A stretch of DNA of 64,000 nucleotides. Origin: Anaeramoeba ignava BMAN (Eukaryota > Protista > Anaeramoebae). Each line of letters starts with the position of its first letter. Positions within the stretch are counted from its first letter, which is position 1. The stretch covers positions 112,487-176,486 of the forward strand of contig JAPDFW010000117.1 of assembly GCA_028826165.1 (NCBI GenBank), in the 5' to 3' direction. Shown here one piece after another: positions 16,867-60,362 of the stretch. Made by a program: the position numbers and the translations under genes. The notes under the pieces were generated by a model. The model was not told the DNA's origin. It did not search any database and saw only the letters and a list, made by a program, of their open reading frames with translations.

Positions 16867-16963
16867 TTTCTTTCTTTTATATTTTAAAAAAAATGAAAAA
16901 TGAAAAATTAAAAATTAAAAAAATTGAAAAAGAAAATGAATTGGAATCAAAAAGTGGAATTGA

Positions 16964-19900
16964 TTAAAAAATTCCACATTTAGTTTTTTCTTTTTTCTTT
17001 CGTTTTTGTTTTGTTTTTTCTTTTTTATCAAATTCTTTTTTAATTTCTTCTTTTTTAATATTAATCTCTTCTTTAATATTAATTTCTGTAAATCCTTCAA
17101 GATTTTCTTCTTTCTCTTTTAAAATTAAATCAATTATTGAATTTAGATTTAATTGATAATAATCTTTTAAATCTAAATATTCTTCATTTGGTATTTGATT
17201 TACTTCAAATTCATCATGATAAAGAAAATAAATTAATTGTTGAATTGTTTTAAATGATTTTTTTGAATAATCATGAACTTGATTTGATGTATCTGAAACA
17301 TTTAATTGAAACATTCCTTTGAATAATTCACTTCTTATTATTAATATTAATTTATGAACTTTGATTTCTTTTTCTTTAATAATTATTTTAAATTCTTTTG
17401 TTTCATTTTCTTGATATAATTTTGATAAATCTTTTATTATTCCTTTTCTTCCTTTTTTTTCTTTAATCCAATTTGAATCAATTTCAATTTCTTCCAAAAA
17501 TTTTGATATTTGTTGTTCTTGAGATTTTTGTTCTTCATTAATTTTTTGATTTTGATTTTGATTAATAGAAAAATTATTGATTAAAGTTTCTTGAATTAAA
17601 TCAAAATTTGGAAATCCTGTATAAATGAAATTAAGAACATTTTCAACTTCAATTTTGGATTTTGTTTTGCAATTATTGATAAATTTTTGTAAAATTAATT
17701 TATTGTTATTAAATCTTGTTAATAATATTAATTGATGAACATTAAATTTAAATAAATCATTGCTTTCAATTTGTAAATCTGAAAATTCGTTTGATTTGAA
17801 TAATTTGTTCATATCTTCATTAATTGAATAAATTTTAAGAATTAATTCAATAAATTCATTTGGAATTGTTTGTAAATTATCTAATGTTAAAATATTTGCA
17901 TTGTTCATCAATAAAAATTGAAATAATTTTAAATTTTTATGTTTGATTGATAATGTAAGAATTAATTTCCCATTTTCATCTTTTGAATTTATCATTAAAT
18001 CATTTTCAATCATTAATTCAATAAAATTAAATAAATCATTTTCTTTTTTTCTTTGAAAAATATAATCTAAATATGTTTCATTGCTATTATTTTGAGCATT
18101 AATATCAGCACCATTTTCAATTAATACTTTAATAGATTCGATTGAATTATATAAATATTGGGATGCTAAATGTAATGGAGTTTCATTTCTATTTGTTCTT
18201 GAATTAACATCTAATCCTTTGGAAATTAAATATTCAATAATTTCAACTGATGTTTGATATTGGGATGCAATATGTAAAATTGTTTCATTTCTATCTGTTT
18301 TGGAATTAATATCAGCTCCTTTGGAAATTAAATATTCAATAACTTCAACTGATGTATTTGATTGGCATGCAAAATGTAATGGTATTTTATTCCATTTTGT
18401 TTTTGCGTTAATATCCAATCCTTTGGAAATTAAATATTCAATAACTTCAACTGATCTTTGGTATTGACATGCAAAATGTAAACATGTTTCATTTTGATCT
18501 GTTTTTGAGTTAATATCAGCTCCTTTGGAAATTAAATATTCAACAACTTCAAATGAATTGAATCGACATGCAATATGTAAAAGTGTTTCATTTCTATTTG
18601 TTTTTGAATTAATATCAGCTCCTTTGGAAATTAAATATTCAATAACTTCAACTGATCGATTCGACTGACATGCAAAATGTAAACATGTTTCATTCGATTT
18701 TGTTTTTGATTTAATATCAGCTCCTTTGGAAATTAAATATTCAATAACTTCAACTGAATTTTGATAAGAACATGCATAATGTAATGGTGTTTTGTTTTGA
18801 TCATTTTTTGCGTTAATATCTAATCCTTTGGAAATTAAATATTTAATAATTTCAAGTGAATTAAATTGGCATGAATAATGTAAACATGTTTCATTATATT
18901 TTGTTTTTGAATTAATATCAGCTCCTTTGGAAATTAAATATTCAATAACTTCAATTGATTTTTGGAATTGACATGCAAAATGTAAACATGTTTCATTTTG
19001 ATCTGTTTTTGAATTAATATCAGCTCCTTTGGAAATTAAATATTCAATAGCTTCAATTGAACTAAATTCACATGCAAAATGTAATGGTACTTCGTTTTGG
19101 GTTGTTTTGGAATTAATATCTAATCCTTTGTAAATTAAATATTTAATAATTTCAAGTGATTTTTGGAATTGGCATGCAAAATGTAAACATGTTTTTTTTT
19201 GATTTGCTTTTGAATTAATATTTAATCCTTTGGAAATTAAATATTCAATAACTTCAACTGAATTAAATTCACATGCATAATGTAATGGATTTTTGTTTTG
19301 ATCTGTTTTTGAATTAATATCTAATCCTTTGGAAATTAAATATTCAATAACTTCAAGTGAATTAGATCTACATGCTAAATGTAAACATGTTTCATTATAT
19401 TTTGTTTTTGAATTAATATCTACTCCTTTAGAAATTAAATATTCAATAACTTCAAGTGAATTCGATTTACAAACTAAATGTAAACATGTTTCATTTTGAT
19501 CTGTTTTTGAATTGATATCAGCTCCTTTGGAAATTAATAATCTAATAATTTTAAATGTTGAATTTGATTGGCATGCAATGTGTAATGGTGTTTGATTCCA
19601 ATCTGTTTTTGAATTAATATCTAATCCTTTGGAAATTAAATATTCAATAATTTCAATTGATCGATTTGATCCACATGCAAAATGTAAACATGTTTTATTC
19701 CAATTTGTTTTTGAATTAATATTTAATCCTTTGGAAATTAAATATTCAATAACTTCAATTGATTTATTTCGGCATGCAAGATGTAAACATGTTTCATTCC
19801 AATTTGTTTTTGAATTAATATTTAATCCTTTGGAAATTAAATATTCAATAACTTTAATTGAATTTGATTGACAAGCATAATGTAAACATGTTTCATTTTG

Positions 19901-21101
19901 ATTTGTTTTTGAATTAATATTTAATCCTTTAGAAATTAAATATTCAATAACTTCAATTGAATTTGATTGACATGCATAATGTAGTATATTAGCATTCCAT
20001 TCTGTTTTTGAATTAATATTAGCTCCTTTAGAAATTAAATATTCAATAACTTTGATTGATTTATTTGATTGACATGCATAATGTAAACATGTTTCATTCG
20101 ATTTTGTTTTTGAATTAATATTTAATCCTTTGAGAAATTAAATATTCAATAACTTCAACTGAATTATATTTACATGCATAATGTAAACATGTAATATTTT
20201 GATCTGTTTTTGTATGAATATCTAATCCTTTGGAAATTAAATATTCAATAACTTTAATTGAATTATATTGGCATGCAAGATGTAAACATGTAATATTCCA
20301 TTTAGTTTTTGAATGAATATTTAATCCTTTGGAAATTAAATATTCAATAATTTCAATTAAATTTGTTTTTGGTTTTTTAAGGAAAAGATAATGAATTATT
20401 GAATATTCTTTTTGTGTTTTATTATTTAATTCAATTCCTTTTGATATTAATAATTTCATGTTTTGAATTGATTGTGTTTTACTTGAATAATGAATTCCTG
20501 TTTTGTTTTTTTTTCCTTTTGAATTGATAATATTTTGATTATTTTCATTTTCTAAAATCATTTTTAATATTTCATAATTTTCTTCATATTTACAAGCTAA
20601 ATGGAATATTGTTTCATTTTCAATATTTCTTATTTTTATATCAGCTCCTTTGGAAATTAATAATTTGATTAATTCTCTTTTTTCTTCTTTTATTTTTTCT
20701 TTTTCAATTTCATTTTTAAATTCAATTTCTTTTTCATTTTCAATTTCTTTTTCATTTTGTTTAATAATTTTATTAATTTGAATTAATAAATAATGAAGAA
20801 TTGTGTTATTTTCTTTATCTTTAGAATCAATATCAATTTTTTTTGAAATTAAATATTCAATAATTTCTTTTTTATTTTCATTTAAAATTGCTAAATGAAG
20901 TGAATTTCTTTCAAATTCATCTTTAAAATTTGGTTCAATTCCTTTTTCAATTAATAATTCAATTATTTTTAATTCACTTTTCTTTTGAATTGCATAATGT
21001 AAAAGTTTTTGATCATTTTCTTTTTTCAAATTTATTTCAATTTTCTTTAAACTTTCAATATCATTTTCTTCAATAATTTTTAAAATTTTTGGATTATTCA
21101 T
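16964..21101 (-). CDS. ankyrin-repeat + tandem BTB protein with CaaX tail (array 1, gene 2); 1-nt insertion near 20130
   Basis: Near-identical N-terminus and BTB-BTB to gene 1, three fewer repeats, ends KRKKKEKTKCGIF. Confidence 0.85.
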
Positions 21102-21149
21102 TTTCTTTCTTTTATATTTTAAAAAAAATGAAAAATGAAAAATTAAAAA

Positions 21150-24031
21150 TTAAAAATTAATTTTTTGAATCAAATTAAATAAAATTAAATCAATTATTGA
21201 ATTTAGATTTAATTGATAATAATCTTTTAAATCTTCGAATTCATGAATATTTTCTTTAGTTAATTTTGTTTCTTCAAATTCATCATGATAAAGAAAATAA
21301 ATTAATTGTTGAATTGTTTCAAATGATTTTCCTGAATAATCATGAACTTGATTTGATGAATCTTTAACACTTAAAAACATTCCTTTAAATAATTCACTTC
21401 TTATTATTAATATTAATTTATGAACTTTGATTCCTTTTTCTTTAACAATTATTGTAAAATCTTTTGTTTCATTTTCTTGATATAATTTTGATAAATCTTT
21501 TATTATTCCTTTTCTTCCTTTTTTTTCTTTAATCCAATTTGAATCAATTTCAATTTCTTTGAAAAATTCTTTTATTAAATGATAACCTTTTTTCCTTTCT
21601 TTTCTTTGTTTTTGTTCTTCTGTTATTTTATCGCTCTTCATATTAAAAAACAATAAAGTTGGCTTCTTTAAATTTGTTTTACTAATTTCAATTAAAGTTT
21701 CTTGAATTAAATCAAAATTTGGAAATCCTGTATAAATGAAATTAAGAACATTTTCAACTTCAATTTTGGATTTTGTTTTGCAATTATTGATAAATTTTTG
21801 TAAAATTGATTTGTCGTTATTAAATCTTGTTAATAATATTAATTGATGAACATTGAATTTAAATAAATCATTGCTTTCAATTTGTAAATCTGAAAATTCG
21901 TTTGATTTGAATAATTTGTTCATATCTTCACTAATGGAATAAATTTGGGGGAATAAATCCACAATTTCTTTTTGAATCAATGTATGTGGTAAATCAAGAA
22001 TATTTGCATCATTCATTAGTAAATATTGAGTCAATGATATTTTTTTATCGAAGATTGCTATTGAAAGAGGTGAGATATAATTTTCTTTTTTGATATTAAG
22101 ATCTGCACCTTTTGAGACCAAATATTCAACAATTTCAAATGTATCTAATTGTTTGCAAGCAGAATACAAAGGAGTTTCATTCAAAATTGTTCTTGAATTG
22201 ATATCAGCACCTTTTTCAACTAAATATTTGATAATCTCAAATGAGTTTGAATTGCAAGCATAATATAATGGTGTTTTATTTGATTGATCCTTTGCATTTA
22301 CATCTGCTCCTTTCTCAATAAGATATTTAATAAACTCAACCGATTTTTGATATGCACAAACTAGATGCAGAAGTGTTTCATTTTGGTTTGTTTTCTTTTC
22401 GAAATCTGCTCCTTTGGAAATTAAATATTTGATCATCTCAATCGAATCATCTTGTTGACAAGCCAAATGCAAAGGTGTTTCGTTTTCACTATTTTCTGCA
22501 TTAACATTAGCTCCATTTTCAACAAGAAATTTCACTACTTCAAGAGAGTTATTCAAACAAGCTAGATGCAAAGGTGTTTCATTTTCGAGTGTTTCTGAAT
22601 TAATTTCTAGTCCTTGAGAAACAATATATTGAATGATTTCAAGTGAATTTGATTCGCATGCAAAATGTAAAGTTGTTTCATTTGAAAATGTCACTGAGTA
22701 TAAATAAGATCCCTTATCAACAAGATATTTCACAACTTCAAGTGAATTAAGCTCACAGGCATAATGAATTGGATATTTGCGTTCAGAGAAATTTGATTGA
22801 TTAATACCATTTGAATTTTCAGCAATAAATTTTATGATTTCAAGTGGTTTTTGAGTTTGCAAGCAAAATGTAAAAATGTTTCGTTATCATTATTTGCTGC
22901 ATTAATACTAGCTCCGTTTTCAACAAGATACTTCATTGTTTCAAGTGAATTATTCAATAATGCGTAATATAAAGGTGCTTCATCTTCATCTGTTTCCATA
23001 TTCACATCAGCTCCGTTTTCAACAAGATATTTCATAGTTTCAAATGAATTTTCTTGTTGGAAAATCAAATGCAAAGGTGTTAAATTCTCCATATTTTGCG
23101 CATCAATATAAGCTCCATTTTCAACAAGATATTTAATCAATTCAAGTGAGTTATTCATGCAGGCAAAATGTAAAGGTGTTTCTTCTTCAACATTTTGCGC
23201 ATCAATATCAGCTCCATTTTCAACAAGATATTTAACCAATTCAAGTGAATTATTCATGCAGGCAAAATGCAAAGGTGTTTCTTTATTGATAGTTTCAAGA
23301 TTTGCTCCTGCTCCATTTTCAACAAGATATTTGACAATTTCAAATGGACGTTCTTCGTTTTTGCAAGCAAAATGTAAAGGTGTTTCAATTAATTTATTGA
23401 GCTCATTAACGTTAGCTTTTTTCTCAACAAGATACTTTATAATTTCAAAAGAATTATTCAAACAAGAAAAGTGCAAAGGAGTATCTTCAAAATCTGTTTT
23501 ATCATTAATATTGGCTCCATTTTCAACAAGTAATTTGATAAGATCAAGTGTTGATTTTTTGTTTTGACAAAGAAAATGCAAAGCTGTTTTTTGTTCATCA
23601 TTTTTTGCATTAATATCAATTCCATTTTCAATCAGTAATTTTATAATTTCAAATGATTTTTGTGGTTTATTTCGACAAATAAAATGTAAGACTGTTTCAT
23701 TTTTGTTATTTTTTGTATTAATATCAATTCCATTTTCAATCAGTAATTTTATAATTTCAAATGATTTTTGTGGTTTATTTCGACAAATAAAATGTAAAGC
23801 TGTTTCGTTTTTCTTATTTTTTGCATTAATATCAATTCCATTTTCAATCAATAATTTTATAATTTCAAATGATTTTTGTGGTTTATTTCGACAAATAAAA
23901 TGTAAGACTGTTTCATTTTTCTTATTTTTTGAATTAATATCAATTCCATTTTCAATTAAAGATTGCAATTCCTGAATTAAATTTTGATGAGAAACTGAGA
24001 TTAAGGTTGTTTGAAGATTAAAAGGTTTCAT
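21150..24031 (-). CDS. ankyrin-repeat + tandem BTB protein (array 1, gene 3); 1-nt deletion near 22850
   Basis: Two overlapping ORFs that join into one ankyrin array (ETPLHFAC..NSLELVKYLVENGA) followed by BTB-BTB; no CaaX. Confidence 0.85.
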
Positions 24032-27385: not shown

Positions 27386-29193
27386 ATGTTAAAAAATTAT
27401 TCAAATTTAAATTCAAATTCAAAAATTAGATCAAATCAAATTCAAAAAGAAAAATTGGAAAATTTAAAAAAAATTCTTCAAAATCCCAATTTTTTTCAAA
27501 CAAGAGAAGATAAACCTAAAAAATTATCACTTGATATTTTATTAGAAATTCCAAAATTAAAAGGTTTTGTTTTTTAAAAAAAAAAAAGTGGAACAAAATT
27601 TTCTTTTCAATTTTATTAACTTTTTTTTATTAATTTTTATTTAGAAATTTCAAAAAATCAATTCAAAATTGTTTTTCTAAAAAAATTATCAATTTGTAAT
27701 CAAATTTATTATTTTGAAAAAATGAATCCAATCAAAATGGAAAAATTTGAATATAAATTGAAAACTTTAAGAAATTTCAAAAACGATCACAAATATCTTA
27801 TTTTCAAAATTACTTCAAATGGTAAAAAAAAGATTTTTTTTGGAAAATTTTAATCTAAATTCTAATTAATTTTTTTTTTTAAAATGGAAAACAAAGATTT
27901 CAAATAATTTGTTTGATTATTTTCCTCATTTTGATTTAGAAGAAAAACAAGAAGAAGAAATAATTTTAAAAAAAATGGAATTTTATTGGAAACAAAATCA
28001 ATGGATTTTTACAATATTTTTGAAATTAATTAATTTCCCCAATTTTCCAGGAAAGTTTAAAGAAGAAATGTTGAATTCAAAACTAATTTCTCAAGTAAAT
28101 TTCAATTTTTTTCATTTTTCAAAAAATAGAAATTTCATTTTTCTTCTTTATTTTTTAGATTTTCTCTCTATTTCAAAACAAAGACCCAAAAGTTGAAGAA
28201 TCAGTTAAATTAATTTTACAGTCAATTTCTTTACATTTATTGAAAAAACGAAATTTTATTTTTGGCAAAATTACAGAATTATTATATGAGGTTTTATATA
28301 ATGGAAATTTAAAGGAAATTCAAGCAAATGAAAGTTTATTGTTTATTTTTGAATTGGCACAAAATATTCTTCATCAATTTCCAAAACAAATTACATCTTC
28401 ACAAAAAAGATTTTTGATGAAGATATTAATTCCTTTCCAAAAGCATGATTCTTATCATAAATTTGCATCAGAAATAACACAATGTATTTTGGAGGTTGTT
28501 GAAAAAAAAAGGGAATTAATAATAGAAGTAATTTTTCAAATGATAAAAAAATGGCCAACTCAAAATTATATGAATGAGAATTCTTGTTTGAAGCAATTAG
28601 AAATTTTGATTAATCACATGAAACTCCAAGAATTAGAAGTTATTTTTATTCCAGTTTTTAAGAAAGTATCATCCAAGTTTAATGATGGGAATTTTGTTGT
28701 TTCAGAATCAGCCTTTCGTTTTTTTGAAAATGAAATTAATTTTGGTTTAGTTAAAACAAAATTGAAAGTTGTTTTACCAGAAATTTATCCAGATTTAAAA
28801 TATTGTTCTGAAAATCATTGGAATGAATCAATTAGAAAATTAGCTTTGGATATGATTTCTTATATTGATAATTTAGATCATAATTATTTGACAAAAATGG
28901 AAAAGGAATATGAAGAGAAAAAAGAAGGAAGATCAATTCAAGAAAAAGAGAGGGAATTAAAATGGGAAAAAATATTTTTAAATTTTAAGGAAGGAGAGCA
29001 AAATTCAAATAATATAAATAATATAAATAATATAAATAATATTAAATCAAATATTAAATCAAATAATATAAATAACAAATCAAATAATAAATCTAATAAT
29101 TTAAATAACAAATTAAATAATAAATCAAATAATTTAAATAACAAATCAAATAATAAATCTAATAATATAAATAATATAAATAATAAAAAATAA
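27386..29193 (+). CDS. divergent PP2A B56 (B') regulatory subunit; exons about 27386-27563, 27645-27821 (probable 1-nt indel), 27898-28094, 28159-29193
   Basis: ISNNLF, LFQNKDPK, KILIPFQK, IKKWPTQN, NFVVSESAFRFFENE, LPEIYPDL...NHWNESIR; N-rich tail. Confidence 0.8.
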
Positions 29194-30030
29194 TATAAAT
29201 AATAAATCAAATAATTCAAATATTAAATCAAATATTAAATCAAATATTTCAAATATTAATTCAAATATTAATTCAAATATTAATTCAAATATTAATTTAA
29301 ATAAATCAAATATTAAATCAAAATAATATAAATAATATAAATAATATAAATCAAATATTAAATCAAATATTAAATCTAATAATATAAATAATAAATCAAA
29401 TATTAAATTCAAAATTAAATTAAATTACAAATAAATAAAATATAAATAAAAATAAATTTAATTTTAAATTTTAATTCAAAAATTAAAATCAAATAATATA
29501 AATAATAAATAATATAAATAATTCAAATATTAAATCAAAATTTTTAAACAAATATTAACAAATATTTTAAATCAAATATTAAATAATAAAATCAAAATTA
29601 AATCAAATAAAAATCAAATAAATCAAATATTAAATAAAATAAATCAAATATTAAATCAAAATAAATCAAATAAAATCAAAATTAAATCAAATTAAATGAA
29701 CTAATCAAATATTAAATCAAATATTAAATCAATATTAAATCAAATATTAAATCAAATATTTCAAATCAAATATTTCAAATATTAAATCAAATATTAAATC
29801 AAATACAATCAAATAAATCAAATATTAAATCAAATATTAAATCAAATATTAAATCAAATATTAAATCAAATATTAAATCAAATAATAAATCAAATAATAA
29901 ATCAAATAATAAATCAAATAATTCAAATATTAATTCAAATAATTCAAATAATAAATCAAATATTAATTCAAATATTAATTCAAATATTAATTCAAATATT
30001 AATTCAAATAATAAATCAAATATTAGTTCA
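29190..30030. repeat. degenerate 12-mer satellite (AATATTAAATCA)n continuing from the B56 N-rich tail into the intergenic region
   Basis: Directly visible. Confidence 0.8.
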
Positions 30031-30139: not shown

Positions 30140-32148
30140 TTAAATCTTTAAAAAAAATTGAAGAAAAGAATTTAAATTTAAACCAAAATAATTAATAGAA
30201 TCAAATAATTCCTTTTTTGAAGATTTTGATAATTTTGAAATATCAATGGAATCAGTATAAAAAAAACTAATCAAAGATTCCATTGTTTGAAAGGATTTCT
30301 TGCTTTGTTCAACAACTGAATTAGAAGGATCATTAACACTTAAAAACATTCCTTTAAATAATTCTGATCTTGCAAACAAAATTAATTTATGAACTTTAAT
30401 AACTGAATTTGACTTATTTGATTCAATAATAATTTCAAAATCTTTTGATTCAGAATCATTGAATAAATTTGTTAAATCTTTAATAAGATTTTTTTTGCCA
30501 ACTTTTTTTGGAAAAAAAGAATCTCCAAACAAATCATTAAAAAAATCAATAACAATTTGATTTCTAAAAGGATATCCAGTATAAATAAATTCAAGAATAG
30601 TTTCTGCGATTTCAAAAGGTTCTTTTTGAATATTTTCAAGAAATTTCTCAAATTGATTTTCTAAACGCAATTTTAAAATTAAAGAATGAGCTTGAATTTC
30701 TTTTCCTTGAGTTTTGATATTTATATCATATAATCCTCCTTCTTTTAATAATAATTTCATATCTTCACAAAGTGAATCATAACATTTAATAAGAGTTTGA
30801 ATTCTTTTGCTTTTTGTTAATTGTTCTAATTTTTTTTCCTAATTTAAAAAAAAAAAGCAAATAAAAAAGTTGGAATTTTTTTTTTAAAAAAATTTATTTA
30901 CTTTTAATATAAAAGTTTTATCTGCTCCATAATCTAAGACTAATTCGATATTTTTCAATGGAGCATTATTGATTAGCATTAAATAAAGAACAGATTCACT
31001 CTTTAATATTTTTTTTTAAAATAAATAAATGAATAAATATTTTTTTCTAATTTTTTACTGTTTCAGTTTTTGCTCCTTTTGATAATAAATATTCTGCAAT
31101 TTCATATTTATCAAAAGCATTAAAAAGAGGAGTAAAATCCTTTTATTTTTTTTATAAAAGAAAAATCAAGAGAATTAGGGAAAAATTTGGAATTAATTTT
31201 TTTTTTTACATCCTAAAAAAAATAAATTAAAATTTAAAAAGAATTCAATTTAAATTTAAATTTAATTTACACACTTAAAAAAAACAAACAATTTATTTTT
31301 TTTATTTTTATTTATTATTTATTATTTAAATTTAAATAAAAAAGTGGAACAAAAACAAATTTTTTTTTACATCAAGAGTATCAACTTCAGATCCTGATTC
31401 AATAAGGAATTTAACAATTTCTAAAGTGTTTTTATTTCTGCAAACGTAATGAAGTGGAATTAAACCCTTTAATTTTTTTTTAATATTAAAAACAAATAAA
31501 AAATAGAATATAAATTATAAATACAGCCTAAAAATAATTTAATAGAATTAAAATAAGTATTTGAATATAAAAAGGATAAATCAATTACTTCCTAATTTTC
31601 AAATTAATTTTTTAATTTTGATTTTAATTTTAATTTTAATTTTGATTTTAAATAAAAAAATACATTTTGAATATTAGGATTTGCTCCAGAATTTATTAAA
31701 AGTTTAATTACTTCTATTCTTGGTTTATCAAAACATTCATTATGTAAAGCTGTATTATTCTTAAATTTAAATTTGATTTAAATTGAAATTGAAATGGAAT
31801 TTAATTGAAAATTAAACTTAAATTACAAACTAAATAAAATTTAAAAAAAGAAAATTAATAGAATTTTAAATTTTAAGTAAAATTTATTGATTAAATTTTT
31901 TACTGACTTTTTAAATTAAAATTTTTAATTTAGAATTTTTGGATTTTTTAAATAGAATTTTAAATACATCTTTTTTATTAATATCAACACCATTTTTAAT
32001 TAAATTTTTAATAAAATCAAAACTTTTTTTTTTTTCACAAGCATTTTGTAATTCGGATAAATCCTAAAAAAAATCAAAAACAATTTAAAATTAAAAATTA
32101 TAAATTAAATTAAAAAATTAAAATTACATCAGATTCACTTGAACTCAT
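30140..32148 (-). CDS. ankyrin-BTB-BTB protein (401 aa), 13 exons: 32148-32128, 32063-31968, 31906-31904, 31829-31827, 31759-31664, 31591-31589, 31527-31525, 31466-31371, 31273-31271, 31212-31210, 31139-31059, 31000-30902, 30838-30140
   Basis: All 12 introns are GT-AG, phase 0, 58-97 nt; the spliced product gives regular 34-aa ankyrin repeats followed by BTB-BTB (IQAHSLILKLR; IKVHKLILFARSELFKGMF). Confidence 0.8.
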
Positions 32149-32245: not shown

Positions 32246-32980
32246 ATGATTTTTCCAAATCCTTTAATTTTACAACAAGCACCAGTTTTTGTTCAACAAG
32301 AAAGTGAAACAGTTAGAAATCGGTTTATAAGAAAAATCTACACAACTTTAACAATTCAAATACTAACAACATACATTATATTCAGAATAATATTATCACT
32401 TCCATTAAAACAAAGAGAAGAATTATTTTCAGGATCATTAATTTTATTAACAACTTTAATAGCAATAATATCATTAGGATTATCAATTTTTGAAAGAAAT
32501 AAATATCCAAGAAATTTAGTTTATTTGGCTTTATGGACTTTTTTTCAAGCTTTAACTTTAGGCTTTTCTTTGGCTTCAATTAGTCAACCTTCAATTGTCA
32601 AAATTGCCTTTAAATTTGCAACTGGAATTTTTGCATTATTAACAATGTTCACTTTTCAAAACCGTTTTTCAATTGATCGTTATTCTTTGATTTTTTTCAC
32701 CTCTTCTTTGGAAACTTTGTGGATTGTTTTGTATACTTTTATTTATCCTGCTGACTTTTATTATTATGGTAGATACTATCTTTTTTCTTTGATTTCAATC
32801 GTTATTTTTTCTGTTTATGTTATTTTGGATACTTCAAGAATTTTGGATTCTGTTAATCAAAATGATTGGGTTTTGGCTGTTATTCTTTTATATTTTGATT
32901 TTATTCGTTTATTTATGAAACTTCTGAGATTGTTACAAAGAATTTCTGAAAATGAAAAAAAGAAACAAAGGAGAAAATAA
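32246..32980 (+). CDS. TMBIM/Bax inhibitor-1 (lifeguard-like) membrane protein, copy 1
   Basis: VRNRFIRKIYTTLTIQ, YPRNL, FTFQ, VILDT...LYFDFIRLF; about 7 hydrophobic segments. Confidence 0.9.
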   Translation: MIFPNPLILQQAPVFVQQESETVRNRFIRKIYTTLTIQILTTYIIFRIILSLPLKQREELFSGSLILLTTLIAIISLGLSIFERNKYPRNLVYLALWTFFQALTLGFSLASISQPSIVKIAFKFATGIFALLTMFTFQNRFSIDRYSLIFFTSSLETLWIVLYTFIYPADFYYYGRYYLFSLISIVIFSVYVILDTSRILDSVNQNDWVLAVILLYFDFIRLFMKLLRLLQRISENEKKKQRRK

Positions 32981-33220
32981 TTTTTGAAACAAAATTTTGA
33001 ATTTGAAACAAAATTTTGAACTTGATTTTTGAATTTGAATTTGAAATAAAATTTGATTTTGATTTTGAATTTGAATTTGAAACAAAATTTGAATTTGATT
33101 TTAATTTTTAATTTGAATTTGAATTTGAATTTGAAACAAAATTTTGAATTTGATTTTGATTTTGAATTGATTTTGAATTTGAATTTGATTTTGAATTTAA
33201 AATAAAATTGGAATTTGAAT

Positions 33221-33267
33221 TTTCATTTTTTCATTTTTTTATTTCATTTTTTTATTTCATTTTTAAA
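33221..33267 (+). promoter_or_regulatory. example of the tandem TTTCATTTT initiator-like element found just upstream of most start codons
   Basis: Four TTCATTT copies before the ATG at 33268; the same sense-strand motif occurs before 329, 1606, 5532, 32246, 34041, 46069 and, as AAATGAAA on +, upstream of most minus-strand genes. Confidence 0.6.
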
Positions 33268-33987
33268 ATGATTGCAGAAAATCCTTTAATTTTACATAAT
33301 ATGCCAGTTTTGGTTCAATATGAAAATGTTCAAATCAGAAATAGATTTATGAGAAAAATCTACACAACTTTAACAATTCAAATAATGATAACATACATTA
33401 TATTCAGAATAATATTATCACTTCCATTAAAACAAAGAGAAGAATTATCAAAATCAATAATTTTAATTTTAACAACAGCATTATTAACAATAATATTCAT
33501 AGGATTAGCAATTTTTGAAAGAACTAATTATCCAAGAAACTTAATCTATTTGATCTTACTTTCTTTTTTTGAAGCTTTAACTTTAAGCTTTTCTTTGGCT
33601 TCAATTAGTCAACCTTCAATTGTTAAAACTGCTTTTAAATTAACAGCAGGAATTTTTGGATTATTAACAATGTTTACTTTTCAAAACCGTTTTTCAATCG
33701 ATCGAATTTCTACTATTTTTTTCATCTCTTTTTTGGAACTGTTACTTATTATTTTTGTCTCCATTTTGAATCCTTATGATTTTTATATTTATCCTGGTTA
33801 TTATGTTATTTTAATGATTTCAATCGTGATTTTTTGCTTTTATATTGTTTTTGATACTGTAAGAGTTTTGGATTCTCTGAATGAAGATGAATGGGTTTTG
33901 GCTGTTATTATCTTATATTTTGATTTTCTTCGTTTATTTATGAAAATTCTTGAATTATTATCTTATCTTGCCAAAAAGAATAAATAA
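33268..33987 (+). CDS. TMBIM/Bax inhibitor-1 membrane protein, copy 2
   Basis: Tandem paralog; start placed at the ATG at 33268 (MIAENPL), after TTTCATTTT motifs. Confidence 0.9.
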   Translation: MIAENPLILHNMPVLVQYENVQIRNRFMRKIYTTLTIQIMITYIIFRIILSLPLKQREELSKSIILILTTALLTIIFIGLAIFERTNYPRNLIYLILLSFFEALTLSFSLASISQPSIVKTAFKLTAGIFGLLTMFTFQNRFSIDRISTIFFISFLELLLIIFVSILNPYDFYIYPGYYVILMISIVIFCFYIVFDTVRVLDSLNEDEWVLAVIILYFDFLRLFMKILELLSYLAKKNK

Positions 33988-34997: not shown

Positions 34998-37900
34998 TTA
35001 TTCTTTATTTGCTTTAATTCCCTTTTTTGATCTTCTTTTTTCCTTTTTTTTCTTTTTTTCTTTTTTTCTTTCTTTTTCTTCTTTTTCTTCTTTTTCTTCT
35101 TTCGGAAATGGAACTGATTCTGGTTCTGAATCTTCTTCCAAAAGAAGTTCAAGTTGTTTAACTGCTTCAAAAAATAAATCTGCAACTTTTTTCACTTCAG
35201 ATTTTGTTGTTGATCTTCCCATACTTACTCTCATTGCATTTCTAGCAATTTCTTCAGGAATATGAGAATTAAGAAGAACTTGAGAAACACTTGAACTAAT
35301 AAATAAATCAAAAATTAAAAAAGCAAATAAAAAAATTAGGAACTTTTTTTTTGATTTATTTTTGCTAATTAAATTAATAAATGATTACATTTCTCTTGTT
35401 TGAACATGACAAGCAGCACCAAGTCCTGTTTCAACTTGAGGACATTGAAATAGAATATTTAATCCTGTTGATTCTTTTCCTATAAAACTGAAATTGCAAG
35501 TATTTGGAATTCTTTCTGAAAAATCATTTTTTCCATTAATATTAATTTTAAAATCTGATTCTAATAAAAGTTTTTCGAAATAATCTCTAACTTCAAGTAA
35601 ATGATTATAAAAACCAAAAACATTTTCTTTAACAATCAAAGCAGCCTTTAATAATAAAAATTTTAATATAAAAAATAAATAATAATATAAAAAATAAATA
35701 TATATACTTGTCCTAAACCAACAATCATAGCAGTATTTTCTGTTCCAGATCTATAATTTCTTTCTTGACCACCACCAAGAAAAATAGGTTTTAAAGGGTA
35801 ATTTTTATTAAAGAATATAGCACCAATTCTTGGGCCATAAAACTATTAATAAGAATAAAAAATAGAATAAAAAATAAGAATAAAAAATAAAATAAAAATG
35901 GAATAAAAAATGGAATAAAAAATGGAATAAAAAATGGAATAAAAAATGGAATAAAAAATGGAATAAAAAATAGAATAAAAAATAGAATAAAAAATGAAAT
36001 AAAAATAGAATAAAAAATAGAATAAAAATGGAATAAAAAATGGAATAAAAAATAAAATAAAAATGGAATAAAAAATGGAATAAAAAATAGAATAAAAAAT
36101 AGAATAAATAATGAAATAAAAAATGGAATAAAAAATGAAATAAAAAATGAAATAAAAAATGGAATAAAAAATGGAATAAAAAATAAAATAAAAAATGGAA
36201 TAAAAAATGAAATAAAAATGGAATAAAAAATGGAATAAAAAATGGAATAAAAAATGAAATAAAAAATGAAATAAAAAATGAAATAAAAAATAGAATAAAA
36301 AATAAAATAAAAAATGAAATAAAAAATAGAATAAAAAATAAAATAAAAAATGAAATAAAAAATTATTTTTTTTGAGAACTTACTTTATGACCAACAATAG
36401 TTAAATAATCTACTCTTAATTTTTTAACATCAACTGGTATTTTTCCAATTGCTTGAGCAGCATCAGTGTGAAATAAAATTTTATCTTTTAAATTATGTTC
36501 TTTTTGATAATCTTCAAGAACTTGAGCAATTTCAGAAATTGGTTGAATTATTCCTGTTTCATTATTTGCAAGCATAATTGTAACTAATTTAACTTCTGGA
36601 GTTAATAAATCTTTTATGGTTTGTGGTTCAACAAATCCATATTTACAAACTGGTGCAAAAATAACATTAATTCTTCCATCTTTTTCTAATTTTTTTAATG
36701 GATTCTCAATTGAAGGATGTTCAATGTTTGATGTAATTATTGTTGGTTTATCTTTATTTTTTAATTGTTAATTTTTTAATTTTGTTTTATTTGAATTTTT
36801 AATTTTTATTTATTTACTAAATTGTTCAGCAATTGAATTTATAACCATAAAATTGCTTTCTGTTCCTCCACTTGTAAAAATAATTTCTTGTGATTCACAA
36901 TTTATCCTTTTTTGATAATAAGATTATTTATAAAATTATTTATAAAATTAAATATAAAATTAATTATAAAATTATTTATAAAATTATATATAAAAATTAA
37001 TTATTTTAAAATTAATTATTAAATTAAATATAAAATTTATTTATAAAATTATTTATAAAATTAAATTAAAAAATAAAAAATTAATTATTAAATATTTTAA
37101 AATTAAAAATTATTTATAAAATTATTTATAAAATTATTTATAAAATTATTTATAAAATTATTTATAAAATTATTTATAAAATTATTTATAAAATTATTTA
37201 TAAAATTATTTATAAAATTATTTATAAAATTATTTATAAAATTATTTATAAAATTATAAATAAAATTATTTATAAAATTAATTATAAAATTATTTATAAA
37301 ATTATTTATAAAATTATTTATAAAATTATTTATAAAATTATTTATAAAATTATTTATAAAATTATTTATAAAAATTATTTATATAAATTATTTATAAAAA
37401 TTTATAAAATTATTTATAAAATTATTTATAAAAATTTATTATTTATAAAATTATTTATAAAATTATTTATAAAATTATTTATAAAATTAAATATAAAATT
37501 ATTTTAAAAATTATAAAATTTATAAAATTATTTATAAAAATATAAAATTATTTATAAAATTATTATAAAAATATAAAAAAATTATTTATAAAATTATTTA
37601 TAAAATTATTTATAAAATTATTTATAAAATTATTTATAAAATTATTTTTAAAATAAAATTATTTTAAAAAATTATTTATAAAATTATTTATAAAATTAAT
37701 TATAAAATTAATTATAAAATTATTTATAAAATTATTTATAAAATTATTAATAAAATTAATTATAAAAAATTATTTATAAAATTAAATATAAAATTATTTA
37801 TAAAATTATTTATAAAATTATTAATAAAATTAATTATAAAATTATTTATAAAATTAAATATAAAATTATTTATAAAATTAAATATAAAATTATTTATAAA

Positions 37901-38904
37901 ATTATTTATAAAATTATTTATAAAAAATTAATAAAATTAAATATAAAATTCCAATATAAAATAAAAATTTATAAAAATTTATAAAAATTTATAAAATTAT
38001 TTATAAAAAATATAAAATTATTTATAAAATTATTTATAAAATTATTTATAAAATTATTTTAAAATTATTTATAAAATTATTTTAAAATTATTTATAAAAT
38101 TATTTTTATAAAAAATTAAAATTATTTATAAAATTATTTATAAAATTATTTATAAAATTATTTAATAAAATTAATTTATAAAATTAATTATAAAATTATT
38201 TATAAAATTATTTATAAAATTATTTATAAAATTATTTATAAAATTATTTATAAAATTATTTTATAAAATTATTTATAAAATTATTTATAAAATTATTTTA
38301 TAAAAAAATTTATAAAATTATTTTAAAATTATTTTAAAATTATTTATAAAAAATTATAAAATTAAATATAAAATTATTTATAAAATTATTTATAAAATTA
38401 TTTATTTATTAAAATTATTTATAAAATTATTTATAAAATTATTTATAAAATTATTTATAAAATTATTTATAAAATTATTTATAAAATTAATTATTAAAAT
38501 TATTTATAAAATTATTTATAAAATTATTTATAAAATTATTTATAAAATTATTTATAAAATTATTTATAAAATTATTTATAAAATTATTTATAAAATTATT
38601 TATAAAATTATTTATAAAATTATTTATAAAATTATTTATAAAATTATTTATAAAATTATTTATTAAATTATTTATTAAATTATTTATAAAATTATTTATA
38701 AAATTAAATATAAAATTATTTATAAAAATTTTACATATCACCAATTTGTTTTCTTGCATTTTCAATAGCTTTATTTGCAATTTCACCAGAATTATAAGTT
38801 GAACTTGGATTAGCCCAATGAATTTTAAGACTTTCCAAAATTTTTTCATAAACTGTTGAATCAAGAGGAGTTGTAGCGTTATAATCCAAATAAATTTTTT
38901 CCAT
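34998..38904 (-). CDS. SCLY: selenocysteine-lyase-like class V PLP enzyme (NifS family); exons 38904-38735, 36906-36818, 36751-36384, 35842-35708, 35645-35389, 35295-34998
   Basis: [86 protein letters not shown]; motifs are closer to SCLY than to NFS1. Confidence 0.85.
35850..36360. repeat. intronic 11/12-mer satellite (AAAAAATGGAAT)n
   Basis: Fills intron 3 of the SCLY-like gene. Confidence 0.9.
36925..38730. repeat. 1.8-kb intronic 12-mer satellite (TTTATAAAATTA)n, almost free of G/C
   Basis: Fills intron 1 of the SCLY-like gene. Confidence 0.95.
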
Positions 38905-39066: not shown

Positions 39067-41182
39067 ATGACTGAAGTTTCATTTGAAAACAAATTTGAAA
39101 TTGATAACGCTGTTCGAGATGTTCATAATGAAAAGTCAGAAAATTCATGGTTAATGCTTTCATTTGTTGAATCAACAAATCCAAGAACAAAATGGTCTAC
39201 GATTAGATTACAAGCAATTGGTTCAGAAATTGAGGATTTAGTTTCTCATCTTCATAAAAAAATGTTTGCTTTTATTCTTGTTAGAGTTTTGGATAAATAT
39301 GATGGTTATGATACTTATCGTTATGCTTATATTTATTGGGTTTGTTTATTTTGAAATTTAAAAAAAATTTTTTTGGGGATAATTTTTCTAATTTCCTCAT
39401 TAATTTTTCAATTAAATTTTATAATTAATTTTTATAATTAATTTTTATAATTAATTTTTATAATTAAATTTCAATTAAATTTTATAATTAAATTTCACTT
39501 AATTTTTCAATTAAATTTCAATTAATTTTTATAATTAATTTTTATAATTAAATTTCAATTAAATTTTATAATTAATTTTTATAATTAAATTTCAATTAAA
39601 TTTTATAATTAAATTTCAATTAAATTTTATAATTAAATTTCATAATTAATTTTTATAATTCAATTTCAATTAAATTTTTCAATTAATTTTTCAATTAAAT
39701 TTTATAATTCAATTTTATAATTCATTTTTATAATTAATTTTTCAATTAATTTTTCAATTAAATTTCAATTAAATTTTATAATTCAATTTCAATTAAATTT
39801 TATAATTCAATTTCAATTAATTTTTATATCAATTCCAAAAATAATAAAAAAAGATTGGTGAAGAACTTCGTGGAATTGATCAAGCAAAAGTTGGTGTTAA
39901 AAAAGGAGCTATTGAAAAAGCTCTTGGTCATTGGAATGTTGAACTTCAAATTTCCGATTTTGAAGATATGACAATGGAAAATATTATGAAGAAAGGTATT
40001 TACAAATTTTGATTTAATTTTAATTTAATTTTAATTTAATTTTGATTTAATTTTGATTTAAATTTGATTTAAATTTGATTTAAATTTGATTTTAATTTTG
40101 ATTTAATTTTTTAAATTTAATTTTTGATTTAATTTTGATTTTAAATTTTTGATTTTAATTTTTTTGATTTAATTTTGATTTAATTTTGATTTAATTTTAA
40201 TTTAATATTAATTTAATTTTGATTTAATTTTGATTTAAATTTGATTTAATTTTAATTTAATTTTAATTTAATTTTGATTTAATTTTGATTTAATTTTGAT
40301 TTAATTTTGATTTAATTTAAATTTAATTTTGATTTAATTTTGATTTAAATTTAATTTAATTTTAATTTAATTTTGATTTAATTTTGATTTAATTTTGATT
40401 TAAATTTAATTTAATTTTAATTTAATTTTAATTTAATTTTGATTTAAATTTTGATTTAATTTTGAATTTAATTTTAATTTAATTTTAATTTAATTTTGAT
40501 TTAATTTTGATTTAATTTTGATTTAATTTTGATTTAATTTTGATTTAAATTTGATTTAATTTTGATTTAATTTTGATTTAATTTTAATTTAAAAATAGTT
40601 CAAGATGCAAGTGGAACAAGAGATAGAACATCAAACATTGGAGACGACAATCAAAATCCTAAATTAGTAAGTTATCACAGTGTACACAGTCAAACAGCCG
40701 AAAAAGCCAGCCGAAGAGTATTACACGGAGACGAACAAACAAAACAAACGAAACATTTTGTACCGATAGAAAAACAAGGAATGGAATTCATAAACGAATA
40801 TGAAATAAGAGATGCAATAGCAGCAATAAGAAACGATAACGATCCAACTGATTGGCTACTTCTTGAGTACGCAGGAAGAGATCAAGTTAAATTGTCACAA
40901 ACAGGAACTGGAGGCTTAGAAAGTTTGAAGGAAGTTTTGGACACAAGAAAAGTTCAATATGCAATGTTTAGAACAATTCATAGAGTTGATAAAACTGATA
41001 ATGTTAGATTCATTGTAATCCGTTGGGTTGGTGAGAATGTTCCTCCAACTGTTCGTGCAAGAGTTATTACTCATAAGGGTATGATTGATGATATTTTTAA
41101 TCCAGTTCATATTTCTATTGATGAACAATCTTTGACTTCTTTAACTTCTCAATCAATTAAAGAAAGATTAAAGAAACTTTAA
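39067..41182 (+). CDS. coactosin-like protein with two ADF-H domains; exons 39067-39339, 39854-39995, 40599-41182
   Basis: Two ADF-H units (IDNAVRDV...SWLML...YAYIYW|IGE; IRDAIAAIRNDNDPTDWLLLEY...FIVIRWVGENV); both introns are satellite-filled. Confidence 0.85.
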
Positions 41183-41590
41183 TTTCCTTTTAATTTCCTT
41201 TTAATTTTCTTTTAATTTTCTTTTAATTTTCTTTTAATTTTCTTTCAATTCCACTTTTTTTTTTAATTCCACTTTTTTTTTTTAAATTGAACTAGCAAAA
41301 AAAAAACAAAATTTTAATTTAATTTTTTTTTTTATTTTTTAAACAAATTTTATTCAAAATTCTTAAAAGCAAAAAAATAAATTTTGAATTAAATTAGAAA
41401 ATAAATTTGAATTAAATTAGAAAATAAATTTGAATTAAATTTTGAATTAAATTTTGAATTAAATTTTGAATTAAATTTGAATTGAAATGGAATTAAATTT
41501 TGAATTAAATTTGAATTAAATTTGAATTAAATTTTGAATTAAAATTTGAATTAAATTTTGAATTAAATTAGGAAATAAATTTGAATTAAA

Positions 41591-42160
41591 TTTGAATTGA
41601 AATGGAAAAGTAACTTTTAAGAAATTTGAAATCAATTTGAAATTATTCTATCTTAATTCCAATTAAAAAAAAAGTAAATTAAAATTTTGAATTAAATTTT
41701 GAATTAAATTTGAATTAAATTTTGGACTAAATTAGAATTAAATTAGAAATTAAATTTGAAATAAATTTGAATTAAATTAGAATTAAATTTTGAATTAAAT
41801 TTTGAATTAAATTAGAATTAAATTAGAAATTAAATTTGAAATAAATTTGAATTAAATTAGAAATTAAATTTGAAATAAATTTGAATTAAATTTGAATTAA
41901 ATTTTGAATTAAATTTTGAATTAAATTTTGAATTAAATTTTGAATTAAATTAGAAAATAAATTTGAATTAAATTTTGGATTAAATTTGAATTAAATTTGA
42001 ATTAAATTTTGAATTAAATTTTGAATTAAATTAGAAAATAAATTTGAATTAAATTTTGAATTTGAATTGAAATGGAAAAGTAACTTTTAAGAAATTTGAA
42101 ATCAATTTGAAATTATTCTATCTTAATTCCAATTAAAAAAAAAGTAAATTAAAATTTTGA
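41591..42160. repeat. perfect 100-bp direct repeat (41591-41690 = 42061-42160) within a TTTGAATTAAA satellite
   Basis: Base-by-base identity. Confidence 0.9.
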
Positions 42161-42169
42161 TTAAAAAAA

Positions 42170-44362
42170 TCAATTGGCATAATTATCAAGATAATATTCA
42201 TAACAAAACAAGCAAGTAAAGAAATGTTCCAAAGCAGCACTTGAGACACAAATATGCCAAATCTGATGAGAACTTCCAAATATATTAAAACGACCTTTTT
42301 TCGACCATCTTTCTGGGAACTTAAGAGTATAAAAAGCGACACCAATCAAGTATAAAGAACCCATAATAACAAGTCTAATACAAAACTCAATAAAGAACGA
42401 TTTAGGAACAAGCCAATAAGAATGAATCAATGGGGCAACTCCAATCAAACCCATAATGGAAAACAATAGAGCAGAAGTTTTTTTTCTTGTTTCCAAAAAA
42501 CCGTTGAAAAAAAATATAACAATTAACATAAAAGATCCAAAAACGGAAATTATTATCAAATATAAATTGCGATAATTTGTAAATTGATAAAGAGCAAAAT
42601 AAAGCAAAGGTATAAATGAGCAAACAATAAGAAGCACAATTCCCAAAAGATCAAATTTCAGGAATAAACTCAATATTTTGTTTGAATGACATTCATAAAT
42701 GTGATAAACTGTTGATGCTATAAAACATGATAATGCTCCAAATGGATATGTTGCAAATATCCATTTATCCATTGCTGTTGATTTTTTGATTTTGTCTTTT
42801 GTGTAAACGTAAATGATTAATCCAAAAACGATGAATATTGGAATAAATGTTGTCCATATATTTAATGTCTATTTTCAAAATGAATTTTAATTTTATAAAT
42901 AAATTTTAATTTTAATTTTAATTTTAATTTTATAAATAAATTTTAATTTTAATTTTGATTTTAATTTTAATTTTAATTTTAATTATAATTTTAATTTTAA
43001 TTTTAATTTTAATTTTATAAATAAATTTTAATTTTAATTTTAATTTTAATTTTAATTTTAATTTTAATTTTAATTTTAATTTTAATTTTAATTTTAATTT
43101 TAATTTTAATTTTTAATTTTAATTTTAATTTTAATTTTAATTTTAATTTTAATTTTAATTTTAATTTTAATTTTGATTTTAATTTTAATTTTAATTTAAA
43201 TTTTAATTTTAATTTTAATTTTTAATTTTAATTTTATAAATAAATTTTTAATTTTAATTTTAATTTTAATTTTAATTTTAATTTTAATTTTAATTTTAAA
43301 TTTAATTTTAATTTTAATTTGAATTTTTAATTTTAATTATAATTTTAATTTTAATTTTAATTTAATTTTAATTTAATTTTAATTTTTATTTTAATTTTAA
43401 TTTTAATTTTAATTTTAATTTTGGTTTTAATTATAATTTTATTTTTAATTTTAATTTTAAATTTAATTTTAATTTTAATTTTAATTTTAATTTTAATTTT
43501 AATTTTAATTTTATAAATAAATTTTAATTTTAATTTTGATTTTTAATTTTGATTTTTGATTTTGATTTTTATTTTAATTTTATAAATGAATTTTAATTTT
43601 AATTTTAATTTTAATTTTAAATTTTAATTTTAATTTTAATTTTAAATTTTAATTTTAATTTTAATTTTAATTTTGAATTTTAATTTTAATTTTAATTTTA
43701 ATTTTATAAATGAATTTTAATTTTAATTTTTATTTTAATTTTAATTTTAATTTTTATTTTAATTTTAATTTTAATTTTATAAATGAATTTTAATTTTAAT
43801 TTTTATTTTAATTTTAATTTTAATTTATATTTTTAATTTTAATTTGAATTTTAATTTTATAAATGAATTTTAATTTTATAAATGAATTTTAAATAAATAA
43901 AAAAAAACAAACTTCATTATGAAGCTTAAAAATGCTTCGAGTGCATTTCCAAAAAGAATAGTTATTTCTATAACCATGTTTAAGAAAAGGATTATCACGT
44001 CTAAGTTCATGAATTTCTTCAAGTGAAAAAAGTTGAAATTCATTTAATTTTGATTTTTTATCTTCAAAATTGATAAATTCAAATTCAAGTTCACTTTCAT
44101 AATCTTCTTTAAATTCTGTATCTTTTTCAGTTGTTTTTTCAGTTGTTTTTTCAGTTGTTTTTTCAGTTGTTTTTTCAGTTGTTACTTCAACTATTTGGTC
44201 AGAATTTGTTTTGATTTCAATTGTTTTTTCTGAATCAGTTTCTTTTGTTTCATTTATTTTTTCTGAATCAGTTTCTGTTAAATCACTTATTTTTTCTGAA
44301 TCAGTTTCTGTTATTTCAACCAATTTTTCTGAATCAGTATCTATTATTTGACTCATTTGCAT
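42170..44362 (-). CDS. PAQR / adiponectin-receptor-like (hemolysin III) membrane protein; exons 44362-43913, 42868-42170
   Basis: DNPFLKHGYR, SIFKLHNE|TLNIWT, STVYH, FDLLGI, KFPERW..GRFNIFGSSHQIWH. Confidence 0.9.
42885..43890. repeat. intronic (TTTTAA)n satellite
   Basis: Fills the 1044-nt PAQR intron. Confidence 0.9.
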
Positions 44363-54788: not shown

Positions 54789-54859
54789 TTTATTATTTTT
54801 GTTTTGAAATAAAAAGAAAAAAAATGAAAAAAGGAGAAAAAAGCAAAAAAAAAATTGAA

Positions 54860-57169: not shown

Positions 57170-57246
57170 TTTATTCTTTTTTTGTTTTGAAATGAAAAAA
57201 AATGGAAAAATGAAAAAAAATGAAAAAAAAATGAAAAAAAATGGAA

Positions 57247-60285: not shown

Positions 60286-60362
60286 TTTATTCTTTTTTTG
60301 TTTTGAAATGAAAAAAAATGGAAAAATGAAAAAAAATGAAAAAAAAATGAAAAAAAATGGAA

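What the first reader, a model, noticed from the sequence alone, without database searches (positions are those of the whole stretch)
31140..31967. Six single-codon (3-nt) microexons, in pairs, encode the hairpin tips of successive ankyrin repeats
Seen: on the minus strand, each ~200-nt gap after a 96-nt ankyrin exon contains exactly two AG-NNN-GT islands: TCA 31906-31904 (S), TTT 31829-31827 (F), GAA 31591-31589 (E), GCT 31527-31525 (A), TGT 31273-31271 (C), GAT 31212-31210 (D). Including them splits each gap into three introns of 58-97 nt, the normal size in this window. It also restores the ankyrin D/N-x-x-G-x-T-P-L-H spacing (KKD-S-F-NNTALH, IQN-E-A-GLIPLH, TLD-C-D-DFTPLF) and gives a unit of 96+3+3=102 nt, the same length as the repeat in the intronless paralogs. 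All introns are phase 0. Established: 3-nt microexons are rare, and ankyrin beta-hairpin residues are main target-contact positions. Inference: a one-codon-per-exon architecture placed on the specificity residues. Skipping any microexon keeps the frame, so splicing could remodel the binding loops combinatorially (up to 2^6 isoforms). Standard gene finders would miss this.
Basis: partly seen in the sequence, partly recalled or inferred. Interest (0 to 1): 0.92.

Follow-up and report, generated by a model that had tools for sequence, protein, structure and literature searches.

The report
Single-codon exons in amoeba ankyrin genes
In the anaerobic amoeba Anaeramoeba ignava, the two variable amino acids at the tip of each ankyrin binding loop sit on their own three-base exons; the layout recurs hundreds of times in the genome, the public annotation misses it, and a transcript of a sister gene shows that the tiny exons are really spliced in.

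Summary
Confirmed. The window is Anaeramoeba ignava BMAN. The six AG-NNN-GT islands are at the stated places, split three 197-231-nt gaps into nine normal introns (58-97 nt; genome mode 76), and have a joint shuffle probability near 1e-13. Including them restores the ankyrin hairpin spacing seen in 166 of 186 control repeats; the skipped spacing was seen in none. No RNA was reachable for this gene, but a transcriptome-derived protein of a paralogue (EukProt) has exactly two extra residues at all five hairpins against its genome annotation, and three of those residues were traced to AG-NNN-GT islands. The layout is genome-wide (774 paired 3-nt islands; 29-57 for 2, 4 or 6 nt), appears in A. flamelloides, and extends to TLDc and BTB/BACK genes with arrays of 7 to over 30 one-codon exons between near-identical introns. 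The 2^6 splice-library idea is not supported: the one transcript includes all ten codons, and two per loop is what the fold needs. Best reading: real, mostly constitutive one-codon exons spliced by intron definition. The scan noted this layout on other DNA of this genome (62+ notes); the follow-ups I saw had no RNA evidence. I found no paper describing it.

The parts
32128..32148 (-). Exon 1 (21 nt, start codon, 7 aa)
   Evidence: matches the N-terminus of the annotated protein P0001
31968..32063 (-). 96-nt ankyrin exon, ends on hairpin position 1 (Asp)
31904..31906 (-). Microexon TCA (Ser), ankyrin position 2
31827..31829 (-). Microexon TTT (Phe), ankyrin position 3
31664..31759 (-). 96-nt ankyrin exon, positions 4 to next 1 (Asn)
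31589..31591 (-). Microexon GAA (Glu), position 2
31525..31527 (-). Microexon GCT (Ala), position 3
31371..31466 (-). 96-nt ankyrin exon, positions 4 to next 1 (Asp)
31271..31273 (-). Microexon TGT (Cys), position 2
31210..31212 (-). Microexon GAT (Asp), position 3
31059..31139 (-). 81-nt ankyrin exon (shortened fourth repeat); followed by a single 58-nt intron with no microexon
30902..31000 (-). 99-nt exon, degenerate last ankyrin repeat
30140..30838 (-). Last exon (699 nt): BTB/POZ region and stop codon
   Evidence: Pfam BTB PF00651 E 4.8e-16
31140..31967 (-). Nine GT-AG phase-0 introns of 58-97 nt around the six microexons; unrelated to each other in sequence
   Evidence: mean pairwise identity 0.59 against 0.61 shuffled

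Best explanation
The gene is a 13-exon ankyrin-BTB gene (401 aa) of Anaeramoeba ignava whose six 3-nt islands are true exons, normally all included. How it works: introns in this genome are short and almost free of G, so each is recognised as a unit between its GT and AG (intron definition) and exon length does not matter; because the AG and GT of a 3-nt exon are too close to be occupied at once, the three introns of each loop are probably removed one after another, each step adding one codon (inferred). The codons give positions 2 and 3 of the ankyrin beta-turn, the variable tip of the binding surface (shown by alignment). The protein is most likely a cullin-3 substrate adaptor, ankyrin repeats binding the target and BTB binding the ligase (inferred from the domains, not tested). 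Origin: an old phase-0 intron after hairpin position 1 was multiplied locally in steps of one codon (intron+codon duplication), a process still visible in TLDc and BTB/BACK genes, where near-identical introns flank different codons. There the cloned introns can act as slippage and recombination arms that change loop length and sequence in the DNA; in the window gene the introns have diverged and the layout is a fixed, inherited state (inferred).
For: Shown: splice signals, spacing and shuffle test. Hairpin spacing G-to-L of 14 in 80/81 window paralogue repeats and 86/105 foreign repeats, 12 in none; full model 14,14,14, skipped model 12,12,12. Transcript protein P0390 (EukProt EP01156, 541 aa) equals annotated P0366 (KAJ5069619.1, 531 aa) except for two extra residues at each of five hairpins; patterns predicted from it found AG-AAT-GT, AG-GAA-GT and AG-ACT-GT islands with 71-74-nt introns in the right order on one contig, controls 0. 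Genome-wide paired islands: 774 for 3 nt, 36 for 2, 57 for 4, 29 for 6, the latter nearly all simple repeats; none has TAA or TAG as first core. 27 of 66 ANK-BTB rows have annotations two residues short, scattered over the tree on long branches. A. flamelloides gene L051 has phase-0 introns after position 1 and two candidate pairs that restore spacing 14. Array introns 73-86% alike against 64-68% shuffled, cores only 36-52% alike.
Against: No RNA for this gene: no run was listed and its protein cluster has no transcript member. Only one transcript-annotation pair was found among 30 clusters looked up. Only 3 of its 10 extra residues were traced to islands; one paired pattern found nothing with 50-80-nt spacers. 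A profile built from foreign ankyrin repeats did not rank the all-included isoform first. The A. flamelloides pairs are inferred from sequence in longer, noisier introns. Order of splicing, cullin binding and the duplication origin are inference; the tree is a quick, weakly resolved one.
Confidence: 0.74

Rival explanations
1. Splice-combinatorial receptor library: microexons are real but skipped in many combinations, so one gene makes a family of binding loops; strongest for the long TLDc arrays, where phase-1 cores create new junction codons when skipped.
For: All cores are 3 nt, so any subset keeps the frame. The TLDc loop after GPxFG varies from 1 to 12 aa among paralogues; all-included loops would be 8 and 17 aa, rich in Tyr and Asp, the second longer than any annotated loop; the 16-exon array could give about 22,000 stop-free peptides. 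Precedent at larger scale: schistosome MEGs and brown-algal ROCO LRR exons.
Against: The one transcript includes 10 of 10. In this gene two per loop gives the canonical turn, and disturbing beta-turn 1 opens it into a hinge in designed ankyrins (PMC4308713). 8 of 100 listed cores of the TLDc-type intron family begin with AA or AG, which would form a stop after T in some skips.
Confidence: 0.15
2. The islands are not exons in this gene: each gap is removed as one intron (or recursively, using the islands as stepping stones without keeping the codon), giving the annotated 395-aa protein.
For: The NCBI model is exactly this; no RNA for this locus.
Against: The same annotation omits codons that a transcript of a paralogue contains; spacing 12 never occurs in control repeats; length is fixed at 3 nt and TAA/TAG are avoided, which stepping stones would not need.
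Confidence: 0.05
3. The exons are real and constitutive but their position is not linked to binding: a mobile or self-copying intron inserted next to an existing intron at 3-nt steps and was tolerated only where a loop allowed it; purely neutral intron gain. This shares the splicing claim of the best explanation and differs in origin and meaning.
For: One intron-end motif flanks 206 exact 3-nt cores on many contigs; many units have near-identical introns but different codons, as expected if introns were inserted into an existing reading frame; intronless paralogues do well without microexons.
Against: Insertion should also give 1, 2, 4, 5 or 6-nt exons and hit other positions; pairs of other sizes are near background and the ankyrin pairs sit at the same two positions in distant paralogues and in A. 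flamelloides.
Confidence: 0.25

Closest known systems
Microexons of animals and plants (e.g. the 3-nt exon of RPS24; 1-15-nt plant microexons, PMC8831610)
   Same: Tiny GT-AG-flanked coding exons, frame-preserving, missed by annotation.
   Different: Known cases are scattered single exons of mixed length (plant mode 9 nt); here the length is fixed at one codon, they come in tandem pairs and long arrays, and they recur at one structural position in hundreds of places.
Schistosome micro-exon genes (MEGs; PMC10526429)
   Same: Runs of short exons in multiples of three; proposed source of protein variation.
   Different: MEG exons are 6-81 nt, mostly 15, with 0.1-5-kb introns, and encode secreted proteins with signal peptides that are alternatively spliced; here 3-nt exons, ~70-nt introns, folded ankyrin/TLDc domains joined to BTB, and inclusion in the one transcript seen.
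Brown-algal ROCO LRR exon shuffling (PMC11378527; PMC3341825)
   Same: One repeat per exon, uniform intron phase, expanded candidate-receptor family, variable ligand-binding face.
   Different: The shuffled unit there is a whole 72-nt repeat; here the extra unit is a single codon.
Designed ankyrin repeat libraries (DARPin/ANK-N5C; PMC4308713)
   Same: The microexons encode exactly positions 2 and 3 of DxxGxTPLH, two of the randomised positions.
   Different: An engineered library; no evidence here that one gene yields a library.
Ankyrin-BTB proteins (ABTB/NPR1-like cullin-3 adaptors; from my own knowledge)
   Same: Ankyrin repeats plus BTB/POZ domain.
   Different: Lineage-specific expansion with a C-terminal BTB; cullin binding and substrates untested.

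Membership tests
Coding microexon | Length at most about 30 nt, flanked by AG and GT of normal introns | tested here: met
Coding microexon | Present in mature mRNA of this gene | not testable with these tools
   no run listed; no transcript member in its cluster
Coding microexon | Equivalent exons present in mRNA of a paralogue | tested here: met
   P0390 against P0366 and islands found by prediction
Coding microexon | Coding constraint (frame, stop avoidance, fit to the domain) | tested here: met
Schistosome-type micro-exon gene (MEG) | Most of the coding sequence in 6-81-nt exons with long introns | tested here: not met
   18 of 1206 coding nt are in microexons; introns 58-97 nt
Schistosome-type micro-exon gene (MEG) | Secreted product with signal peptide | tested here: not met
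   N-terminus is a short acidic stretch followed by ankyrin repeats; BTB at the C-terminus; judged by eye, no predictor run
Schistosome-type micro-exon gene (MEG) | Isoforms by exon skipping | tested here: inconclusive
   one paralogue transcript, all included
Dscam-type mutually exclusive cassette array | One exon chosen from each cluster | tested here: not met
   both exons of each pair are in the paralogue transcript; both needed for spacing 14. Not tested for long TLDc arrays
ROCO-type repeat-exon shuffling | One repeat per exon with uniform phase | tested here: met
   96+3+3 nt units, phase 0; 102-nt one-repeat exons in A. flamelloides
ROCO-type repeat-exon shuffling | Diversifying selection and shuffling between copies | tested here: inconclusive
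   positions 2-3 are among the most variable columns; array cores diverge more than their introns; no dN/dS or population data
Recursive-splicing ratchet site | Zero-length AG-GT junction, nothing kept in mRNA | tested here: not met
   3 nt between AG and GT, kept in the paralogue transcript
Ankyrin-BTB cullin-3 adaptor | Ankyrin repeats and BTB domain | tested here: met
   Pfam Ank_2 E 1.4e-33, BTB E 2.2e-15; paralogue model folds as ankyrin stack
Ankyrin-BTB cullin-3 adaptor | Binds cullin-3 and a substrate | not testable with these tools
   needs experiment

The most novel reading that the evidence does not exclude
Anaeramoeba has a codon-resolution diversification system: binding loops of its expanded BTB adaptor families are written one codon per exon between cloned introns, so that recombination between the introns (in the DNA) and/or exon skipping (in the RNA) reshuffles single residues and loop length, making a natural variable-receptor repertoire, possibly against symbionts, viruses or prey bacteria. 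The window gene is an old, frozen two-codon member.
Probability: 0.3. Interest if true: 0.95.

Novelty: new variant of a known kind. Interest (0 to 1): 0.82.

Why it matters
It shows a spliceosome routinely joining consecutive one-codon exons, at the lower limit of exon size, in hundreds of places; this makes questions on minimal exon size, intron definition and order of intron removal directly testable with RNA-seq that already exists. It means many public Anaeramoeba protein models lack their binding-loop residues and that intron counts are too low. The cloned-intron arrays are a visible case of intron gain by intron-plus-codon duplication and a candidate new way to diversify binding loops.

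Tried and rejected
Following the operators' note, the spliced model was searched exon by exon or through the annotated protein id; the joined 401-aa model was not sent to any search or fold tool and was only scored locally in scripts. The reversed-pattern control (305) is inflated by coding repeats, so the size series (2, 4, 6 nt) was used as the control. A metagenome scan gave one distant, uninformative hit. Literature searches for single-codon or consecutive microexons and for Anaeramoeba plus exon found no description; the genome paper's first supplement has no occurrence of 'exon'. The idea that array cores are coded to be stop-free under every skip held in two arrays but not generally. 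Chance, recursive ratchet sites and MEG membership were rejected as above.

Full report
Identity. The window lies on a 42,843,398-base, 147-contig assembly, the figures published for Anaeramoeba ignava BMAN (PMC11550330 supplement). The last exon of the gene finds one identical protein, an A. ignava ankyrin-BTB protein of 395 aa (P0001).

Observation. They divide gaps of 208, 197 and 231 nt into nine phase-0 GT-AG introns of 58-97 nt, against a published modal intron of 76 nt and 8% GC. Shuffles of the gap interiors give a joint probability of about 2.5e-13. The full model has 13 exons and 401 aa; leaving out the six codons reproduces the NCBI protein exactly. The loose motif is not enriched in the window as a whole, but strict AT-flanked islands occur only at 3 nt and only in this gene.

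Fit to the protein. Counting from the Gly that ends helix 2 to the Leu of the TPLH motif, 80 of 81 repeats in the window's intronless ankyrin-BTB paralogues and 86 of 105 repeats in unrelated ankyrin proteins have 14 residues, none has 12. The full model gives 14 at all three loops, the annotated model 12. A profile from the paralogues ranks the all-included form first of 64 (103.8 against 77.7 bits for none included); a profile from foreign repeats was noisier and did not. The two codons are positions 2 and 3 of the DxxGxTPLH beta-turn, high-entropy positions that are randomised in designed ankyrin libraries and form part of the binding surface (PMC4308713); they are also among the most variable columns in Anaeramoeba repeats.

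It is genome-wide. A pattern for two successive 3-nt islands with 53-83-nt introns has 774 matches; the same pattern for 2, 4 and 6 nt has 36, 57 and 29, nearly all simple repeats. None has TAA or TAG as first core. This is a lower bound: one intron-end motif alone flanks 206 cores, many in ~180-nt units that the first pattern misses. The loci fetched show three settings: a second ankyrin-BTB gene with pairs at the same site; two BTB-TLDc genes with 7 and 16 phase-1 cores in the loop after GPxFG; and a BTB/BACK gene followed by at least 34 phase-0 cores with no stop codon. In the arrays the introns are near-copies (73-86% global identity against 64-68% shuffled; 91-94% over aligned columns, a figure inflated by low complexity) while the cores are only 36-52% alike. 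In the window gene the introns are unrelated to each other. The TLDc loop is 1-12 aa long and hypervariable among 120 annotated paralogues, and the annotation of the 7-core gene skips all cores.

Transcript evidence. Among the best 150 relatives of P0001, about two dozen ankyrin-BTB proteins have spacing 12 throughout; 19 of the first 20 looked up are A. ignava genome annotations. One of them, P0366 (KAJ5069619.1, 531 aa), shares a cluster with a transcriptome-derived protein, P0390 (EukProt EP01156, contig c20329_g2_i1, 541 aa; the name format is that of a de novo Trinity assembly, from my own knowledge). The two are identical except for two extra residues at each of five ankyrin hairpins, in the same register as the window's microexons. 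I then predicted the genomic islands from the extra residues: Asn (AAT) and Glu (GAA) were found as consecutive AG-NNN-GT islands with 71- and 74-nt introns, and Thr (ACT) with a 73-nt intron 620 bases downstream on the same strand of contig C93, each as a single match with zero control matches. One other paired pattern found nothing within the spacer range tried. So single-codon exons of this class are spliced into mRNA, and the annotation's skipped form is not evidence of skipping. This is one gene and one assembled contig; it is not the window gene, for which no run was listed.

Age and origin. An A. flamelloides ankyrin-BTB gene (P0391, L051) has 102-nt one-repeat exons with a phase-0 intron after hairpin position 1 in several repeats, and at two repeats the annotation is short and candidate pairs (AAC/TCC at 6194/6305; GGA/ATC at 10676/10774) restore spacing 14. 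One gene thus shows both states, one intron or three per loop. A quick BTB tree puts the window's intronless paralogues in one short-branched, well-supported group, while the 27 two-short genes are long-branched and scattered (weakly resolved, midpoint root). The inference is that the layout is old in Anaeramoeba and that the intronless tandem arrays are a younger expansion.

How it most likely works. Shown: signals, spacing, coding constraint, inclusion in a paralogue. Inferred: intron definition in a genome whose introns are short and nearly G-free makes exon length irrelevant, and the three introns of a loop are removed in turn. Inferred: extra introns arose by duplication of an intron-plus-codon unit at an older intron site, still active in TLDc and BACK genes, where cloned introns could serve as slippage and recombination arms around single variable codons. 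The protein is probably a cullin-3 adaptor (domains; own knowledge).

Comparison and novelty. 3-nt and even 1-nt exons are known singly; schistosome MEGs use 6-81-nt exons in secreted proteins; brown-algal ROCO genes shuffle whole 72-nt repeat exons. I found no description of systematic tandem one-codon exons, and neither Anaeramoeba genome paper that I searched mentions them. I class it as a new, extreme variant of microexon gene architecture; a codon-level diversification system would be categorically new. Other readers and follow-up agents of this scan noted the same layout elsewhere in this genome; the follow-ups listed state that they had no RNA evidence, and my reading was formed before I saw them.

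Left out. The joined protein was not sent to search or fold tools. No step needed referral.

Noticed in passing
L021-L040 (G000:C1:409300-413130, minus strand): Downstream of a BTB/BACK exon, at least 34 variable codons sit between near-identical ~70-nt introns; read together they give a stop-free polar peptide. Looks like a satellite; a few units have damaged GT or AG (assembly error or decay).
   Followed up: partly
L044-L046 and L047-L050 (G000:C1:942330-942890 and 1057850-1059350, minus strand): BTB-TLDc genes with 7 and 16 phase-1 3-nt cores in the loop after GPxFG; all-included loops are rich in Tyr and Asp, like antibody CDR3 loops. More arrays follow at C1:1061700-1073200 and on C13, C21, C35, C46, C56, C59, C60, many with a ~180-nt period.
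   Followed up: partly
G000:C2:7158-9264 (minus strand): Dense run of 3-nt islands between unrelated introns, up to six or more in a row; gene not identified because the DNA could not be fetched.
   Followed up: no
L041-L043 (G000:C1:698600-701570, minus strand): Second ankyrin-BTB gene with pairs at most hairpins, one loop with a single candidate (3 or 6 nt), and further 3-nt islands (GAA, AAA) outside the ankyrin region.
   Followed up: partly
window 12374-24031 and 50953-63985 (minus strand): Two tandem arrays of intronless ankyrin-BTB genes, several broken by frameshifts or stops (real decay or long-read errors); they form one young clade in the BTB tree.
   Followed up: partly
window 32246-32980 and 33208-33987 (plus strand): Two adjacent intronless paralogues of a multi-pass membrane protein (Bax-inhibitor-1-like by eye), head to head with the ankyrin gene.
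   Followed up: no
window 29005-30025, 35853-36363, 36918-38727, 39402-42062, 42883-43878, 44826-45606, 46206-47853: Long simple satellites (6-13-nt units, up to 1.8 kb, GC near 0 in places) that inflate some introns or intergenic gaps far beyond the 76-nt mode.
   Followed up: no
L051 1930-9549: A 7.6-kb annotated intron in the A. flamelloides gene holds a candidate microexon pair and inverted copies of repeated elements shared with other introns.
   Followed up: partly
P0366 / P0390 C-terminus: This ankyrin-BTB paralogue ends in a hydrophobic, probably membrane-spanning tail, unusual for a BTB adaptor.
   Followed up: no
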